From Hyphochytrium catenoides (lineage: Eukaryota > Protista > Hyphochytriomycota): DNA of 45,833 nucleotides. Both the position numbers and the translations under genes were made by a program. The stretch spans positions 1-45,833 of the forward strand of contig FLMG01001412.1 in assembly GCA_900088475.1 (NCBI GenBank), written 5' to 3'. The notes below the pieces were generated by a model. That model was not told the origin of the DNA. It did not search any database and saw nothing but the letters and a program-made list of their open reading frames with translations. Shown piece after piece: positions 15,059 to 32,964 of this stretch (its first letter is position 1; every line of letters begins with the position of its first letter).

Positions 15059-16253
15059 ATGGGAAGAGACTTTTATAAAATCCTTGGCGTCGACCGTAAC
15101 GCCTCCAGCGAGGACCTGAAGAAAGCGTACCGGAAGCTGGCTCTGAAATGGCATCCAGGTAAGCATTCAGCCTACGCAATAAGTCGTTTTTTAGACTCAG
15201 CTAGGACCTAACCTTCTTCCAATTGCAGATAAGAACCCTGACAACCAGGAAGAGGCACAGAAGAGATTTCAAGAGATTAGCGAAGCCTACGATGTTCTGA
15301 CAGACAAACAAAAGAGAGCGATCTACGATCAGTTTGGCGAAGAGGGACTAAAAGGTGGTGCTCCAGAGACTGGAGACAGTCCTGAGATGGATGGATTTGG
15401 TGGTGGCAGAATGCCCAGAGGATTCCACTATACCTCCGTAGACCCACGTAAGATTTTCGAGCAGTTCTTTGGGACTTCGAACCCTATGGAAGCCGAGGAC
15501 ATCTTTGGCTTCAGCGGGCCCTCGTTCTTCACAGGCACTCGAGGAGGCCGTGGCGGCGGTCCTGGCTTTACGACGTTTCAGACCTCATTTGATGGCATGG
15601 ATGGTATGAGGGGAATGGGAGGCATGGGAGGAATGGGCCGTAGAAGCAACTTTGGTATGGGCAACATGGGAGGTATGGACGGTATGGGGAGGCCTGGCAA
15701 GCCCGAACCAGTCATTCGTACTTTCCAGTGCTCGTTAGAAGAGTTGCTAACAGGCACAACGAAGAGGATGAAAGTAACGAAGAACGTCATAGACGCAAGC
15801 TCTGGCCGGTCCCTGCCGGTTGAGAAGATACTCGAGATCCAGGTCAAGCCAGGGTGGAAAACTGGTACTAAAATAACTTTTGAGGAGGAAGGCGACGAGA
15901 GGCCAGGAGAGAGACCTGCAGACATTGTCTTTGTCCTGGAGGAGAAGCCTCATCCACGATTTAGGCGGGATGGCAGCGATCTCGTCTACAAGGCACGGGT
16001 CACATTGGCTCAAGCGCTGACAGGCTTCAACCTTAGATTAACTCTGCTGGACAACCGTGAGCTGGACCTCAGAATAGACGACGTTATCACTCCTCAGGCC
16101 GTGAAAATTGTCAAAGGGGAGGGCATGCCGCACCAGAAGAATCTCCAGAGGCGTGGAGATCTGCGGATAGAGTTTGATGTCAAGTTCCCGACACGACTCA
16201 CACAAAGCCAGAAAGACCAAGTTAACATGGCTCTCCGCGGTGCAGTGTATTAG
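15059..16253 (+). CDS. DNAJB: Class B (type II) J-domain protein / Hsp40, Sis1/DNAJB1-like
   Basis: [24 protein letters not shown]|[25 protein letters not shown], with intron 15159-15228 splitting the HPD motif. G/F and G/M regions follow, then the C-terminal domains ([47 protein letters not shown]). No zinc finger. Confidence 0.97.
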
Positions 16254-16451: not shown

Positions 16452-18449
16452 TCAGAGCTTGAACTCTATGGACTTCATGCCAAGAAGCTCCATAAGCATT
16501 TCCCTATAGTTCCATACAATAACTAACTGATAAATTTGCTCGCCCTTGAAGGTGACATAGGATCTCCCTGGTATGGATATCTGTGAAGGGCGATCGGCGG
16601 ACAATGTTAGTTGGATTATGCTTAGGACCCAGCTATAGTTTCTACTCTTCAGGCTTTGTACCTGCTTCTTTCGTGCTGGAATGCCATACAAAGGTTCAAC
16701 TTGTGTGCCGCTGAAGGTCCAGCTTACCTTGAACTAGGGAATGACGTTAGCACTTGTCTACCTCTTAGCAATGTAGAAATAAACTGTCAATACCTTCTCT
16801 CCTGCCGCATCCTCCTCCTGGATATCATAGTCCAGCATGATCCCATCCGGAAACGCGCTTATTAAGCTTGACCTAGGGAAAATACGACATCACTAGCTGC
16901 ACAACCACGGTGCAGGAAAAACGCCAAGGATGATAAAGGAAGAGAAAAAGAAAGGTACCAAAGATGGCAACTGAGGGAGATGGATTCAAATGGACGGGAA
17001 ACGAGAGACGCGAAGAGAGATAGGAGATAGAAACACTGAAGAAATCCGCCAAACCGACTCATGTAGGGACAAAAAGGAGTGAAGTCGATCGTTCAGCACA
17101 AGGCGACCCTAGGACTTACCAATAAGCCATTATTTCCCCTCTACCCTTGAGCTCTCGCGAAAGATCAGGGTTGATGAGCGTTGCTTCTGGATGATAGACC
17201 TAACGCATTGACAAGAGTGAGCGGATAAGCCTTTTGGTTAGTCCAGACAGATAGATGGCGCTCATACAAGAGAGAAGTCTGAACAGAGAGGCATTGACAT
17301 GAAGCAGAACCGGAGCGAACCAGTGATCGTGTTAGGTTCAACTTTACCTCTCCAGATATCTCTTCCATGTCTTCAAGGCCGCCAATGTTCCATGCCTCCC
17401 AAATACTTTGCAATGTTTCTCGTCTCTTTCGTAAGAGCTCCTCCTTCTCAAGCATCTCCTTCATCAACGCATCGTCGTTATCGCTATCCACATCCGTTGT
17501 ATCCTCAGAATGGCGTGATCGCCTGTCCCAGCGCACGACAGTCAGACAAGGACAAACGAGGTATGGTCGAGCTTAAACAAGAACGACCCACCCTCTCCCA
17601 ACCTTCCAATCCACACCACCTCTTAGAAGAAGAAAAGGACAGCGGGCCATGAGCGACGCCCAACATTACGATAGGGAAATGCTAAAAGGAGCCAGCTTAG
17701 TGCGGCTATGGGAACTGTCGCAGCGAGCTGGACGAGGATGCAAAACGAAGGCACTGGAGCGAACAAGCGAAGAGTGCAGTTGTGACCTAAGAGTTAACAA
17801 GCAATAGTGCGGCTTGCACCATGATCCGCCAGTGCCAAGTCACCAGTGCTTACTTGCGGACATGCTTCTTATATTGTGTCAGCCTGAGCTTCTTCTCTAG
17901 CTCTGATTTTTGTTGAGCTAGCCTATATGCGATCTCTTTCATCTGCTCCAGGTCCTCATCCTTTCTGCTTGTACGGCGACCAGGAGCTTTGGCACTGAAA
18001 GGGAACACAACCAGTTAGAGGAGAGTGGTTTGAACTTCCGCATTGCACAACGGCGATTGAGTGCGTCGCTTGATCTCCTACCTTTTCGCGCCCTTCGGAG
18101 CCTTCACCTTGACCCTAGTTTTCTTTGTCGTAGCTGTGGTTGCCCTGATCTCGCTATCGGCTGGCGTCACAGGGGAACCTGGAGGTCCTGCCTTCTGAAT
18201 CTCGAGCTGCGGGCTTTCATGGAACCCCTGATCGGTAGCAATAATGGATTCTTCTGATATTGTTATTGTTGAGAGTGCTCCAAGGTCAGGAATAGCTCCA
18301 ACGTCCAAGTTCGAAACACCCAGTGGCCAGTCTAGAGGCCCTGCTTCTTCCGCTCCCAGAAGCCAAGAGGGATCCAGTTCATCCTCCGGTAAACCAACAA
18401 GCTTATCCAAAGCATCAAAGGACGCCTTCTCCCGCTTGATGGGATCCAT
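16452..18449 (-). CDS. SnoaL-like (ester cyclase, NTF2-fold) domain protein with a long acidic/basic/coiled-coil N-terminus
   Basis: Spliced C-terminus: LQSIWEAWNIGGLEDMEEISGE|VYHPEATLINPDLSRELKGRGEIMAYW|SSLISAFPDGIMLDYDIQEEDAAGEK|FKVSWTFSGTQVEPLYGIPARKKQ|ISIPGRSYVTFKGEQIYQLVIVWNYREMLMELLG. This fits the ester-cyclase pattern (AFPD, WTxxGT, GIPxxxK, W..L.xLG). Upstream exons join in frame to ATG 18449; the junction near 17750 is less certain. Confidence 0.75.
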
Positions 18450-23026: not shown

Positions 23027-23788
23027 TTAGCTGCATTTGGTGGTATACCTAACGTCCAAATGGCTAACACCATATCGAAGATAAAGATTCGCCTTATCTC
23101 CTCGAAGCTCAACTAAGCGCTGAGCATCTAAAGTGCCAATCTCATGAAACGCAACAGCGGTAAGAAGATGCCACATCGCGTGAAGTTGCGGATTAAAAGG
23201 CAACTTCTTGATAACCATGTTGCAGCCAAAGAGGTCCAAAGCCCATAAGGAGAAAGCGGATATGCTGATCACGATAATACGCCAGACATGTCTAGCAACA
23301 ACCGCAGAAGTTTTGTTGTTCAGGAAGAAGTGTCTATAAGAGATGCCCAGAGCCACAAAGAGAAGGTGCACCTCACAGAAGATCATCGAGATGACTATTA
23401 TCAGCATAGCGGACATCATGATATGAGCAAGCATCACCCATACTGAGAGTTTTGAGTGCATATAGAGCAGAGATACAAGGGCGGCAGTTTCCACCACTTC
23501 ATCAGCCTTTTGACCCCACCACCAGAGCGTTGCATGGAAAAACGCCGAAGCGATGCCGAGGAAGAGTAGAAGGCACCCAAAGAAGTAGTATTTGGTGCCC
23601 AACCGGTACCTCTTGGCACGTCTCAGGGCAGATATGCTTACCAACACGTAGGCGAGGTTTGATAAGGTGTTCCAAAACTCGGCAACAAAGTGTGACTCCT
23701 GATAGTCTTCCTCACACCAGTTAAGAGGTGCATTCGGCTTACCCCAGAAGCCTCGTAAGCCGACGCTTGGTATATGAGTGTGCGACAT
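23027..23788 (-). CDS. Alkaline ceramidase (ACER/YPC1, CREST family), intronless
   Basis: GFWGKPNAPLNWCEEDY..AEFWNTLSN, SAFFHAT, KADE and QLHAMWH motifs with multiple hydrophobic segments. The first ATG is at 23788; the ORF-track start at 23893 is GTG. Confidence 0.93.
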   Translation of the reverse strand: MSHTHIPSVGLRGFWGKPNAPLNWCEEDYQESHFVAEFWNTLSNLAYVLVSISALRRAKRYRLGTKYYFFGCLLLFLGIASAFFHATLWWWGQKADEVVETAALVSLLYMHSKLSVWVMLAHIMMSAMLIIVISMIFCEVHLLFVALGISYRHFFLNNKTSAVVARHVWRIIVISISAFSLWALDLFGCNMVIKKLPFNPQLHAMWHLLTAVAFHEIGTLDAQRLVELRGDKANLYLRYGVSHLDVRYTTKCS

Positions 23789-24555
23789 TTTTGCGGTACT
23801 AGATGGCGTTGGGGTTTGGTGCCCGAAAGAGATTGTCTTCACCCCAACCAAAGGGTATGGTGAGCTTCCAGACTGGTTAGCAGCTATGGCCACCTCTTGC
23901 TCGGGAAAGAGAGCACCTGAAGGAGTCCTCCAAACACAATAACAGCAGATACTCCGACTTAAGTCCTCGCCCTGCAGGTTGTCAGTAGTACAGACTCTAG
24001 CTTCCTGTCGGGAGGACCTTCAGTACGCAGAACAGAGACTTCCGGAGAATGGGAAGGTAGGAGAGCTTCGTGCCCGTTCAGTTCTCCCCTCAGGTCTGTC
24101 CCGCTGTCAGTGGCTCCCTTCTCTCTTCCTTCCTCACTGTCCTCCGTCAAGGCGCAGCCGTATATTCACCCGTCGTCACGTTTCATCCACCGCCTCATCA
24201 GCAACAAGCAAGGAGGCCACTGGCCACTGCCGTCGGTGCTGCTGCTCCCAACAACCGCCAGTCAGCCGAAAGGAAGCGGAACAGTGATTCACAGCCTTTC
24301 TCCATCAACTCCATAGTTCTAGATGACTTGTCCGTTGTGGTGACCACTCTGTCTTCCTCCATCCTTCCCTTCGTCGTTTCTCCCTCTAAGTTCCTCTTCC
24401 CATGTTTCTTGCTCTGTCTCGTCACGTCTCCTCCTCTCTCGTCAATCTGTTTCTGCATAGTGTAAAGGTTTTATCCTGGGAACAGCAGGGTAGTTTCCCC
24501 CATTATCTACCTCTTCAGATTCTGTCTTGGTTTGTATTCTTCCCCGTCGTCCTCA

Positions 24556-30658: not shown

Positions 30659-32964
30659 ATGGATCCAAAGCGGATCCAGGCTACAGGACGTCCTGGCCCC
30701 ACGATACTCTCCACACGAGGTGGGCAAGGAGGACGTAATACTGCTATGCAGATGCTCCTATTTCTGCTACTCGCAACAGTGCTTCAAGGAAGAGAGTGCT
30801 TTGGACAATCTGCTTCTGCAGCTAGCTGTTTATCAAAAGGTGAGCGCCGGAATCTGCTGTTGTTGCGCAGGAATTGCAGTGCCGTAACCTCCTGCCGCAC
30901 GCATTCCCCTATCACCGCCCCTACTTCTCTTAGCCCAATCCTCCCCTGCACAGCCACAATGGTTGCTCTTTCTGTGATCACTTCAGCTAGAAGCTTTACC
31001 TCATTCCTCTCTCTCCTTGTCTCTTCCACATCTATCTTGACTCAATAATGTCTACTGTTATGTTAACGTACAATGACTGTTCGACAGCTTCAGTGTCCCT
31101 GGTCGGATCCTCCGTTAGCGCGGACCCCGAACTGAGATGCCTGGTGTACAATGGGAAAGTGTTCATGAAACTGGACTCTACGAATCATGCTGTTGATTTG
31201 GCTAGCGATACTCCTGGCGTGACTTTGAGCTCCGCTTCAGGAACAAAGTCTTCAACTGCTGTGACCCCAACGCCTGGCAACGCATCCGCCAAAGAGGGAC
31301 AAGCTGGGGAAGGAAGAGAAGAGTCTTCGTCTTTTGAAGGGGATGGCAAGAACGAGAAGAGGAAGGGATACCTTGGTTATGAGACCCAGTGCGATGGCGA
31401 GGTAATCACGCCTAAGTGTGACCTGGAGCTGTTCTTGATCTATCTTGGCTCTGCCATTTTCGTGATCATGATGGCCGGAGTGATGGCAGGGCTTACAATG
31501 GGCTTCATCTCTCTTGACAAAATGAATCTGCGGATTCTTCAGCTCCAGGGAAACAAGGAGGATCGGACAGCAGCGAAGAGAGTGTTGGCGGTGGTGGGGA
31601 GGCATCATCTCCTCCTTGTCACGCTACTCATTTGGAACTCTCTAGCCAACGAGACCCTTCCTATTGTGCTGGATCGGCTCTTTGATCCAATAACCGCTGT
31701 TATTATCTCCATGTCTTGCGTGCTGCTCTTTGGTGAGGTGATCCCCTCGGCTATCTTCACGGGCCCAAGACAGCTGTACATCGCTGCAAGGATGGTGCCA
31801 GTCATAGAATTTCTTCTTATCGTCACTATGCCCATAGCTCTCCCTCTTAGCAAGGGTCTGGACTATTTGCTGGGCACTCATGATATCACAAGGTATAATA
31901 GGAACGAGCTGAAGGCCCTCATCTCTATTCAAAAAGAAGTTTTTAGCGATATTGAGACGTTGCTAGAAGATGACTCAGAAGAGCAGGACAGCGACAGTAC
32001 GAAGCGAAGGAACACGCACCTCGAGGCATCTCTGCTTGTAGAAGAAGTGAACATCATCCATGGAGCGCTCGACCTGGCCACCAAGAAAGTGAGAGACATA
32101 ATGATTCCTTGGTCCAGCTGCTATACGCTGGACACGAAGACCACGTTGGACTACAAGATAATGAGTGAAATCCTGGCCACCAACCATACGCGGATTCCCG
32201 TCTTTGAAGGTGACAAGAACAATGTCCGGGGGCTCCTAATCACCAAGCAGCTAATCATCGTGGACCCGAATGAAAAGGTCAAGACGGATTCTCTTACTAT
32301 TATTCCTGCTCTACGCGTCCATCCAGAGGACGGGCTATATCATGTCCTGACTGTCTTCGAGCAAAATAAATCCCACATGGCCCTGGTCACGCAGGAGCCA
32401 GAGTTGGTTGGAAGGCTATGGGCAGGTAACCAGCCCCTTGATCCCAAACAGGTGACGATTGAAGGCATTATCACCCTAAATGACATCATCACCGAGCTGA
32501 TGCGGAAAGAAATACTTAGTGAATCTGACCATCACCGAATCTCTTCGAAGATCTCTAAGGTCTTTATGCAGAAGCATGATAAGAATCAGCCAGATGCGCA
32601 GCTAAAGCAGAGGAGAAGCGCCAAGGAGGCACCAACAGAGCGTTCACCGACAACACAATCTTCTTCAGGCGACGTTGCGCACAGGCCGTCCGACGGCAGT
32701 CGGGGCCCCTCCGATCGAACAGTCTCGATTCTCACTCACTCAACGCAGAGCGCTCTCTCTACGACCACCACCGCGACAGGCATCGCGCGGCAGTCGATAG
32801 ATGGGAAGAAGAATAGCCCTCTGGAAGCTTTGGGCATTTATTCGACCTCGAGTGGGACCGATAGTACCACGAATGGCATTTTTTTCTCGAAAGGCGGGAT
32901 GTCCAGTGCACAAAGCGGCATGTCTTCCGATACAAAGCCTCTTCTTGGAACCAAAACGCGATAA
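30659..32964 (+). CDS. CNNM/CorC-type metal (Mg) transport protein: DUF21 plus CBS pair, with N-terminal signal peptide
   Basis: AGVMAGLTMGFISLD, HHLLLVTLLIWNSLANETLPI.LD, VLLFGEVIPSA, YNRNELKALI, IIHGALDL, HTRIPVFE, SHMALV and GIITLNDII. Exon 1 carries MQMLLFLLLATVLQG and joins in frame over an intron at about 30840-31088. Confidence 0.95.

What the first reader, a model, noticed from the sequence alone, without database searches (positions are those of the whole stretch)
16452..18449. SnoaL/ester-cyclase domain fused to a regulator-like N-terminus
Seen in sequence: a complete SnoaL-like domain, invisible in the ORF track because it is spread over five exons. Upstream lie an acidic hydrophobic segment (DELDPSWLLG..LDWPLG), a Lys-rich stretch (TKKTRVKVKAPKGAK) and a coiled coil (IAYRLAQQKSELEKKLRL). 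Established knowledge: SnoaL-like ester cyclases are mostly small stand-alone microbial proteins with a hydrophobic pocket. Inference: a small-molecule-sensing or dimerising regulator, perhaps bZIP-like, built from an intron-colonised and possibly horizontally acquired domain.
Basis: partly seen in the sequence, partly recalled or inferred. Interest (0 to 1): 0.7.

Follow-up and report, generated by a model that had tools for sequence, protein, structure and literature searches.

The report
Zipper-plus-SnoaL regulator-like gene, one transcript
This is a real seven-exon protist gene that joins a conserved coiled-coil "zipper" (a decayed bZIP) to a SnoaL/NTF2-type small-molecule pocket domain, and it belongs to an unstudied protein family also present in Phytophthora and other water moulds.

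Summary
On the minus strand, 18449-16452, there is a seven-exon gene with GT..AG introns of 87, 331, 148, 247, 60 and 81 nt and a 347-codon frame. Its last five exons encode a SnoaL-like domain.

The key doubt was whether the first two exons belong to a separate transcript. An orthologous, syntenic contig (L001) argues strongly against that. It has all seven exons and all six introns at the same positions and phases. Its exon B to exon C gap is only 82 nt, and protein conservation resumes exactly at the acceptor.

Exon-by-exon matches place the gene in a family of about 300-420 aa proteins. The named members are oomycete proteins (Phytophthora, Bremia, Peronospora, Plasmopara, Pythium) labelled only as hypothetical or "SnoaL-like domain-containing". 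All 50 members scanned match Pfam SnoaL, and 7 of 50 weakly match bZIP_1 just upstream.

Exon B aligns to that bZIP-like stretch. Its zipper is 90% identical between the two orthologues, but its basic region lacks the bZIP signature and contains Pro-Gly.

Function is untested. Dimeric nuclear regulator or sensor is the likelier reading, enzyme the less likely. No RNA run was listed. Horizontal acquisition was not tested.

This scan has already noted bZIP-SnoaL genes on other DNA of this genome.

The parts
18082..18449 (-). Exon A. ATG at 18449-18447, with an in-frame stop four codons upstream. Acidic, hydrophobic, probably disordered N-terminus. It ends in a Lys-rich patch (18084-18128) and in phase 2.
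   Evidence: The first ~67 residues are 56% identical to L001:278-475. No Pfam, NCBIfam, word-search or Atlas relative. No detectable homology to oomycete N-termini.
17995..18081 (-). Intron 1 (87 nt, GTAGGA...TTTCAG)
   Evidence: Same position and phase as L001 intron 1 (78 nt).
17854..17994 (-). Exon B. Decayed basic region (17961-17994) followed by a conserved zipper helix (about 17871-17960), then a basic cluster that runs across the splice junction into exon C.
   Evidence: 90% identical to L001:755-877. pN 0.085 against pS 0.92. 42% identity to P0008 residues 27-62, E 1e-6. hhalign against the family, E 3.9e-5. Family profile positions 129-167. No Pfam bZIP hit.
17523..17853 (-). Intron 2 (331 nt, GTAAGC...GGACAG, phase 2). 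Read unspliced, the donor creates TAA at 17850-17852.
   Evidence: The acceptor has a poor pyrimidine tract. The orthologous intron in L001 is 82 nt (880-961), in the same phase, with a good acceptor. No sequence is conserved with L001 and there are no repeats.
17348..17522 (-). Exon C. Acidic Ser/Asp linker, then the first helix of the SnoaL-like domain. The domain starts near 17419. The internal ATG at 17462-17464 would be the start of a stand-alone protein.
   Evidence: 75% identical to L001:963-1142, starting at the acceptor. hhalign against the family 97.6%, E 2.7e-12. Profile positions 171-211, 47.5 bits.
17200..17347 (-). Intron 3 (148 nt)
   Evidence: L001 equivalent is 66 nt.
17120..17199 (-). 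Exon D (SnoaL-like domain)
   Evidence: 96% identical to L001. Profile positions 214-239.
16873..17119 (-). Intron 4 (247 nt)
   Evidence: L001 equivalent is 72 nt. In L002 the intron sits three codons upstream.
16794..16872 (-). Exon E (SnoaL-like domain, AFPDG motif)
   Evidence: 96% identical to L001. Profile positions 242-266.
16734..16793 (-). Intron 5 (60 nt)
   Evidence: Absent in L002 and L003, where E and F are contiguous.
16662..16733 (-). Exon F (SnoaL-like domain, FSGTQ motif)
   Evidence: 88% identical to L001. Profile positions 267-290.
16581..16661 (-). Intron 6 (81 nt, stop-free and in frame, so F+intron+G reads as one 93-aa stretch)
   Evidence: Absent in L002 and L003.
16452..16580 (-). 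Exon G (end of the SnoaL-like domain; stop TGA at 16452-16454)
   Evidence: 89% identical to L001. Profile positions 291-327, 41.5 bits. Atlas feature search of F+i6+G gave PF07366 clusters as its best hits, score 0.91.

Best explanation
One gene (18449-16452, minus strand, seven exons, 347 codons) encodes a member of a stramenopile family. The family layout is a disordered acidic N-terminus, a basic or bZIP-like helix, a short acidic linker and a C-terminal SnoaL/NTF2-type alpha+beta cone domain. SHOWN: the exon-intron structure is conserved in an orthologous syntenic locus. Exons B to G match the family collinearly. The family domain is SnoaL by Pfam and by predicted fold. The zipper and the SnoaL domain are under strong purifying selection. 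The basic region in front of the zipper is not conserved and lacks the bZIP DNA-contact signature. INFERRED: the protein is nuclear, because basic clusters flank the zipper. It dimerises through the zipper, and probably through the NTF2-like domain too. It acts as a regulator whose SnoaL pocket binds a hydrophobic small molecule. This is the same effector-then-sensor order as the bZIP-LOV aureochromes. Because its basic region has decayed, this member more likely works by pairing with another protein than by binding DNA as a canonical bZIP homodimer. A paralogue with an intact basic region would be one possible partner. My odds: single fused gene and family membership about 0.9; regulator or sensor rather than enzyme about 0.5-0.6.
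For: Gene model: all introns are GT..AG and the frame is open. Orthologue L001 (Logan contig, with the DnaJ neighbour tail-to-tail as in the window) carries all seven exons. Its six introns are at identical positions and phases, 66-98 nt long, with the B-C intron 82 nt. Synonymous sites are saturated (pS 0.77-1.0), whereas pN is 0.085 in exon B, 0.06 in the SnoaL exons and 0.26 in the 18 codons upstream of the internal ATG. Introns are unalignable. Family. Pfam SnoaL matches 50/50 members and bZIP_1 7/50; P0070 scores 22.7 bits on bZIP_2 against a cut-off of 22.3. The exon-wise profile hits are collinear, as are the tblastn hits of family proteins on the window. An AlphaFold model of the closest contiguous relative, P0008, has pLDDT 85.8, one 54-residue helix and then an alpha+beta cone. 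Foldseek finds AclR, SnoaL2, AknH, PhzA/B and putative polyketide cyclases, E down to 3.5e-9, target TM up to 0.87. Exon B to the bZIP-like stretch.
Against: There is no transcript evidence: no RNA run was listed. The window's intron-2 acceptor has a weak pyrimidine tract, and the intron is the longest in the gene. Exon B has no Pfam bZIP hit, and most family members fall below the bZIP gathering scores. No ligand, DNA binding, localisation or dimerisation has been tested for any member, and I found no paper on the family. The catalytic residues of SnoaL-type cyclases were not mapped, so enzymatic activity is not excluded. The fold was predicted for a relative about 50% identical in the domain, not for this protein.
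Confidence: 0.65

Rival explanations
1. Two genes. A 170-aa disordered protein (exons A+B) ends at TAA 17850-17852. A stand-alone 158-aa SnoaL protein starts at the ATG at 17462-17464.
For: Read unspliced, exon B runs straight into a stop codon. An ATG sits a few residues before the domain. The 331-nt gap is the longest in the model and its acceptor is pyrimidine-poor. No RNA data exist. Stand-alone SnoaL proteins are the rule in bacteria.
Against: In L001 the same gap is only 82 nt with consensus splice sites. That leaves too little room for a 3' UTR, a promoter and a 5' UTR. The stop follows automatically from a GTA(A/G)G donor in phase 2, and L001 has the same arrangement. Protein conservation starts at the acceptor, 19 codons before the ATG, with an in-frame 6-nt indel. 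Oomycete homologues carry the N-terminal extension and SnoaL in single proteins of 300-420 aa. The word search found no ~170-aa homologue of exon A.
Confidence: 0.05
2. One fused gene whose SnoaL domain is an active enzyme (cyclase, isomerase or hydroxylase-like). The N-terminal extension would serve only for localisation, oligomerisation or regulation of the enzyme, not gene regulation.
For: The best structural matches are enzymes or putative enzymes such as AclR, SnoaL2, AknH, PhzA/B and ChaU. Sources name members 'ester cyclase'. Many polar and aromatic pocket-type residues are invariant in the family. The basic region is decayed here.
Against: The stretch before the domain is bZIP-like in the better-preserved members. 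It is flanked by NLS-like basic clusters and preceded by an acidic activation-like region. That is a transcription-factor layout and is unusual for a metabolic enzyme. Paper PMC5023847 states that no polyketide synthase genes were detected in model Phytophthora genomes.
Confidence: 0.22
3. One fused gene that still binds DNA directly as a non-canonical bZIP homodimer, with the SnoaL pocket gating binding. This would be a true one-component ligand-sensing transcription factor.
For: The region before the zipper is still basic: 7 K/R in the last 17 residues of exon A, plus RR..RK. Family members hit bZIP models. It is established knowledge, not checked here, that oomycete bZIPs often carry substitutions at the conserved Asn.
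Against: Aligned to the family, the signature positions read S..AP..RT in the window instead of Q/N..A(V/A)..(H/S)R. A Pro-Gly pair sits inside the would-be DNA-contact helix. This stretch is not conserved between the window and L001, although the zipper is 90% identical.
Confidence: 0.15

Closest known systems
Oomycete 'SnoaL-like domain-containing protein' family (e.g. Phytophthora infestans PITG_13248, P. nicotianae PPTG_16759, Bremia lactucae CCR75_000352, Plasmopara halstedii 'Polyketide cyclase SnoaL-like domain')
   Same: Same order of parts: acidic N-terminus, RKRK/bZIP-like helix, linker, C-terminal SnoaL domain. The SnoaL exons are 46-53% identical, totalling about 180-190 bits. Profile matches are collinear.
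   Different: The oomycete proteins were returned as single predicted proteins; their gene structures were not examined. This gene has six introns. The N-terminal region shows no detectable sequence homology. The basic region here is more decayed. None of them has a studied function.
Aureochromes (bZIP-LOV) and bZIP-PAS factors of stramenopiles
   Same: An N-terminal zipper-type effector is followed by a C-terminal small sensor domain in the same lineage. The analogy is one of architecture and possible logic.
   Different: The sensor is a SnoaL/NTF2 cone, not a PAS/LOV fold. There is no flavin-binding motif. The basic region is not canonical. There is no evidence of homology beyond the bZIP-like helix.
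Bacterial SnoaL-type polyketide cyclases and relatives (SnoaL, AknH, SnoaL2/AclR, PhzA/B)
   Same: Same fold for the family domain (Foldseek E 1e-7 to 3.5e-9). Pfam PF07366 matches in all homologues.
   Different: Only 10-20% identical. A sequence profile of the family finds no solved structure at E<=0.1 in its SnoaL part. Those proteins are stand-alone proteins of about 130-160 aa. Catalytic residues were not mapped here.
Secreted SnoaL-like proteins of Pythium proposed as bacterial transfers (McCarthy & Fitzpatrick 2016, PMC5023847)
   Same: SnoaL-like domains in oomycetes.
   Different: Those have a signal peptide and two SnoaL domains and are restricted to Pythium. This is a different family, so that paper's transfer argument does not carry over.

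Membership tests
SnoaL-like / NTF2-like superfamily (Pfam PF07366, PF12680) | Pfam PF07366 match above the gathering score | tested here: inconclusive
Single exons by reference gave no hit because the pieces are 24-58 aa. The homologues to which the exons match collinearly score 31-54 bits against a cut-off of 28.4, and 50/50 match at E<=0.01.
SnoaL-like / NTF2-like superfamily (Pfam PF07366, PF12680) | Alpha+beta cone fold (three helices packed on a curved sheet) | tested here: met
   Met for relative P0008, which is about 50% identical in the domain. The model has pLDDT above 90 across the domain. The Foldseek top 50 are SnoaL-type or NTF2-like proteins, target TM 0.7-0.87. It was not run on the window protein itself.
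SnoaL-type aldol/ester cyclases (enzymes) | Catalytic acid/base residues of SnoaL/AknH in the pocket | not tested
   No residue-level alignment to SnoaL or AknH was obtainable with the tools. From memory of the motif, the corresponding positions look hydrophobic here, but that is a lead, not a test.
bZIP transcription factors (PF00170, PF07716) | Basic region signature N-x2-AA-x2-(S/C)-R immediately before the zipper | tested here: not met
   Aligned to the family's Q-R-E-A-V-K-R-H-R stretch, the window reads S-A-K-A-P-G-R-R-T. Asn/Gln, the second Ala, Ser/His and the Arg are all replaced, and a Pro-Gly pair is present. This stretch is not conserved with L001.
bZIP transcription factors (PF00170, PF07716) | Heptad Leu (or hydrophobic) zipper following the basic region | tested here: met
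   M/L/L at seven-residue spacing, plus further Leu residues. 90% identical in L001. The equivalent part of P0008 models as one long helix. It is short, about three heptads.
bZIP transcription factors (PF00170, PF07716) | Pfam bZIP_1 or bZIP_2 match | tested here: not met
   Exon B gave no family at E<=10. Among relatives, 7/50 hit bZIP_1 and 3/50 hit bZIP_2 at E<=0.01. Only P0070 reaches a gathering score, 22.7 against 22.3.
Stramenopile zipper-SnoaL family (oomycete 'SnoaL-like domain-containing proteins') | Collinear match of zipper, linker and SnoaL domain to the family profile | tested here: met
   Exons B to G hit profile positions 129-327 in order and abutting, 12 to 47.5 bits each. tblastn of members on the window gives the same order.
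Stramenopile zipper-SnoaL family (oomycete 'SnoaL-like domain-containing proteins') | Zipper and SnoaL domain on one polypeptide | tested here: met
   Met by comparative evidence only: an orthologous locus with an 82-nt in-phase intron, and contiguous ORFs in P0008 and the oomycetes. There is no RNA evidence.

The most novel reading that the evidence does not exclude
Stramenopiles, including the Phytophthora crop pathogens, may possess an undescribed class of one-component regulators in which a SnoaL/NTF2 pocket senses a lipid-like or aromatic metabolite and controls a bZIP-type zipper. This gene would be a member that has lost its own DNA-contact residues and acts as a ligand-dependent heterodimer partner or inhibitor of DNA-binding paralogues.
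Probability: 0.25. Interest if true: 0.75.

Novelty: new variant of a known kind. Interest (0 to 1): 0.55.

Why it matters
If the pocket really gates the zipper, this would be a second sensor-fused bZIP-type family in stramenopiles, beside the light-sensing aureochromes, but tuned to a chemical rather than to light. The family is present in every oomycete genus returned by the search, including major crop pathogens. No member has a paper in the library searched. For genome annotation, the case shows that a domain split into 24-58 aa exons is invisible to ORF and Pfam scans, yet can be recovered by comparing orthologous loci. It also shows that the in-frame stop after exon B comes from the splice donor and does not mark the end of the gene.

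Tried and rejected
RNA evidence: the look-up of sequencing runs listed no run.

Pfam, NCBIfam and PDB sequence searches with single exons or the stop-free F+i6+G stretch gave only sub-threshold hints: TsrD E 1.2, TIGR02096 E 0.1, 3f9s E 0.47.

The exon A word search, Pfam, NCBIfam, Atlas and profile comparison with oomycete N-termini found nothing.

I tried to reach the genome's own annotation by exact look-up of a neighbouring 638-aa ORF. It is not on record.

No in-window paralogues were found. There are no repeats in the long introns and no intron conservation with L001.

The rep-search hits P0003, P0007 and P0015 were rejected as spurious. P0003 and P0007 are long repeat proteins matching, in 10-11 stretches, a part of the query (residues 28-74 and 29-46) that is largely or wholly intron-derived. 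P0015 is a Tudor repeat protein.

The published Pythium SnoaL transfer (PMC5023847) was rejected as a different family.

Alternative first exons inside intron 2 were considered by eye, such as a short ORF at 17505-17666. I dropped them because L001 has no room for them.

Full report
**Observation**

The region is eukaryotic, spliced and coded on the minus strand. Reading the three minus-strand frames and joining them at GT..AG sites gives seven exons:
- A 18449-18082
- B 17994-17854
- C 17522-17348
- D 17199-17120
- E 16872-16794
- F 16733-16662
- G 16580-16452

The introns are 87, 331, 148, 247, 60 and 81 nt, and the open frame is 347 codons. Exon A carries the acidic, hydrophobic N-terminus: 13 D/E against 4 K/R in its first 60 residues. 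It ends in a Lys-rich tail with 7 K/R in 17 residues. Exon B carries a heptad helix. The domain is spread over exactly five exons, C to G.

The joined protein was built only inside sandbox scripts, to check the frame and to compare it with the orthologue. It was never sent to a search or fold tool. All searches were made exon by exon, or with stop-free stretches, by reference. The joined Pfam scan and fold are left out and named under next steps.

**Is it one gene?**

The rival reading is that exons A+B form one gene ending at the TAA at 17850-17852, and that a stand-alone SnoaL protein starts at the ATG at 17462-17464. From the window alone this looked plausible. Intron 2 is the longest, and its acceptor has only 50% pyrimidines. 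No RNA run was listed.

A word search with the stop-free stretch F+intron6+G (window:16455-16733, minus strand) settled the matter. It returned P0001 from a 4348-nt Logan contig and P0002 from a 685-nt metagenome scaffold, fetched as L001 and L002.

L001 is a syntenic orthologous locus:
- Its gene lies tail-to-tail with a DnaJ gene that is 75-97% identical to the window's neighbour.
- All seven exon peptides hit L001 in order, at 56, 90, 75, 96, 96, 88 and 89% identity.
- Its gene model has six GT..AG introns at the same positions and phases, only 78, 82, 66, 72, 98 and 69 nt long, and an open 356-codon frame.
- The B-C gap is 82 nt with a good pyrimidine tract. That is too small to hold a 3' UTR, a promoter and a 5' UTR.
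- L001 shows the same "stop" right after exon B. It follows automatically from a GTA(A/G)G donor after AA in phase 2.
- Protein conservation resumes exactly at the acceptor (RSRHSE against RSRQSE). It runs through the 19 codons upstream of the internal ATG, with an in-frame 6-nt indel.

Synonymous sites between the two species are saturated (pS 0.77-1.0). Non-synonymous divergence is 0.085 in exon B, about 0.06 in the SnoaL exons, 0.26 in the linker and 0.41 in exon A. The introns do not align.

L002 comes from an AT-rich relative (25% GC). It has E|F and F|G contiguous and introns at other places. L003, the locus of P0008, has the zipper and the whole domain in a single exon. These independently confirm the predicted junctions.

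I put the two-gene reading at about 0.05.

**Is it SnoaL?**

Single exons are too short for Pfam. Sequence searches of the PDB and NCBIfam gave only hints.

The exhaustive representative search with the 93-aa stretch found 16 proteins. Apart from two long repeat proteins and a Tudor repeat protein, which are spurious hits, they are SnoaL proteins. Several are 325-417 aa long with the match at their C-terminus. They match PF07366 at 31-48 bits against a cut-off of 28.4.

A profile search gathered 56 members. The named ones are all oomycetes: many Phytophthora species, Bremia, Peronospora, Plasmopara, Hyaloperonospora, Pythium, Globisporangium and Nothophytophthora. They are labelled hypothetical, "SnoaL-like domain-containing protein" or "ester cyclase".

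Several further results tie the window to this family:
- In a 50-member alignment (A4), 50/50 match SnoaL.
- A profile of A4 hits the window's exons collinearly and abutting: B 129-167, C 171-211, D 214-239, E 242-266, F 267-290, G 291-327, at 12 to 47.5 bits each.
- tblastn of family proteins on the window gives the same picture, with gaps exactly at introns 5 and 6.
- Exons C to G are 46-53% identical to members from all branches.
- The AlphaFold model of the closest contiguous relative, P0008, has mean pLDDT 85.8 and above 90 across the domain. It shows a 54-residue helix followed by an alpha+beta cone.
- Foldseek returns AclR, SnoaL2, AknH, PhzA/B, ChaU and putative polyketide cyclases, E down to 3.5e-9 and target TM up to 0.87.
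- The Atlas feature search of the window stretch also pointed to PF07366 clusters, score 0.91.

**What is the N-terminal half?**

The family consensus just upstream of the domain is a basic stretch followed by a heptad helix. Seven of 50 members hit bZIP_1 (best E 1.6e-5) and three hit bZIP_2. P0070 just reaches the bZIP_2 gathering score, 22.7 against 22.3. The family profile also weakly finds GCN4 and a CREB3-like bZIP in the PDB.

Exon B aligns to this stretch. It is 42% identical to P0008 residues 27-62, E 1e-6. hhalign against A4 gives 70% probability, E 3.9e-5. P0055's bZIP_1 region hits 17990-17877.

Only the zipper is preserved, however. At the positions where the better members read Q-R-E-A-V-K-R-H-R, corresponding to bZIP's N-x2-AA-x2-(S/C)-R, the window reads S-A-K-A-P-G-R-R-T. 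That includes a helix-breaking Pro-Gly and a Thr in place of the invariant Arg. L001 differs again there and is one residue shorter, while the following zipper is 90% identical. Exon B gets no Pfam bZIP hit.

Exon A has a conserved first ~30 residues shared with L001, and faintly with L003. It has no detectable relative otherwise and no homology to oomycete N-termini beyond its acidic, hydrophobic character.

**Mechanism**

Shown:
- One polypeptide with a conserved zipper, an acidic linker and a SnoaL-fold domain.
- Strong purifying selection on the zipper and the domain.
- A decayed basic region.

Inferred:
- Nuclear localisation, from basic clusters on both sides of the zipper, one of which spans the B/C splice junction.
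- Dimerisation through the zipper.
- Binding of a small hydrophobic ligand in the cone.
- A regulatory output.

Because the DNA-contact signature is gone, pairing with another protein is more likely than canonical homodimeric DNA binding. One candidate partner would be the bZIP-SnoaL paralogues that earlier notes of this scan report elsewhere in this genome.

An enzymatic role for the domain is not excluded, since the catalytic residues could not be mapped. I give it about 0.22.

**Comparison and novelty**

The closest known proteins are the uncharacterised oomycete "SnoaL-like domain-containing proteins". The closest functional analogy is the aureochrome (bZIP-LOV) and bZIP-PAS layout of stramenopiles.

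I found no paper describing a bZIP-SnoaL architecture or this family. One 2026 survey mentions SnoaL+LOV combinations only. The secreted two-domain Pythium SnoaL proteins proposed as bacterial transfers are a different family. The age and spread of the fusion do not, by themselves, support a recent transfer.

This scan had already flagged bZIP-SnoaL genes on other pieces of this genome. I used those notes as leads only. Independently of them, I established three things: the public family, its oomycete membership, and the fact that this copy has a decayed basic region.

**Verdict**

"bZIP-like" is right for the zipper and wrong for the basic region. Function is open. The gene is a new variant of the sensor-fused zipper-regulator theme, of moderate interest.

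Noticed in passing
window 15387-16253 (+) and L001:1981-3057 (-): A Sis1-type DnaJ gene lies tail-to-tail with the target, about 200 nt from stop to stop, and this synteny is kept in L001. In L001 the J domain and the C-terminal domain are in one 358-aa ORF. The window ORF holds only the DnaJ_C part, so the J domain must lie in upstream exon(s).
   Followed up: partly
window introns 17523-17853, 16873-17119, 17200-17347 against L001 introns: Three of the six introns are 2-4 times longer in the window than in the orthologue (331 vs 82, 247 vs 72, 148 vs 66 nt). They have no repeats in the window and no conserved sequence, which suggests lineage-specific intron growth.
   Followed up: partly
L002:1-685 (ENA metagenome scaffold, 25% GC): A very AT-rich relative carries the same domain (76% identity in exon G) with a different intron pattern. 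Introns 5 and 6 are absent. There are ~50-nt introns inside the equivalents of exons E and F, and one three codons upstream of the window's intron 4. This is a small case of intron turnover or sliding.
   Followed up: partly
L003:3770-4669 (ENA metagenome scaffold): The P0008 gene model in the database is truncated. An upstream 76-aa ORF, starting with a motif like the window's N-terminus, joins it through one phase-2 intron. This completes a better-preserved basic region.
   Followed up: partly
window 16455-16733 (-): Intron 6 is stop-free and in frame, so exons F and G read as a single 93-aa stretch. Its orthologue in L001 was called as a 94-aa 'protein' (P0001) by a prokaryote-style gene caller in the public collection. 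That is how the orthologous contig could be found.
   Followed up: yes
Bremia lactucae proteins P0016 and P0021: Two proteins of the same length (359 aa) that fall in one 90%-identity cluster carry nearby locus tags (CCR75_000352 and CCR75_000349). This suggests a recent local duplication of the family gene in that oomycete.
   Followed up: no
window 31048-32964 (+), 23027-23893 (-): Neighbouring ORFs match CNNM/CBS (metal transporter-like) and ceramidase Pfam families. The 638-aa CNNM ORF is not on record by exact sequence in the public gene collection.
   Followed up: no
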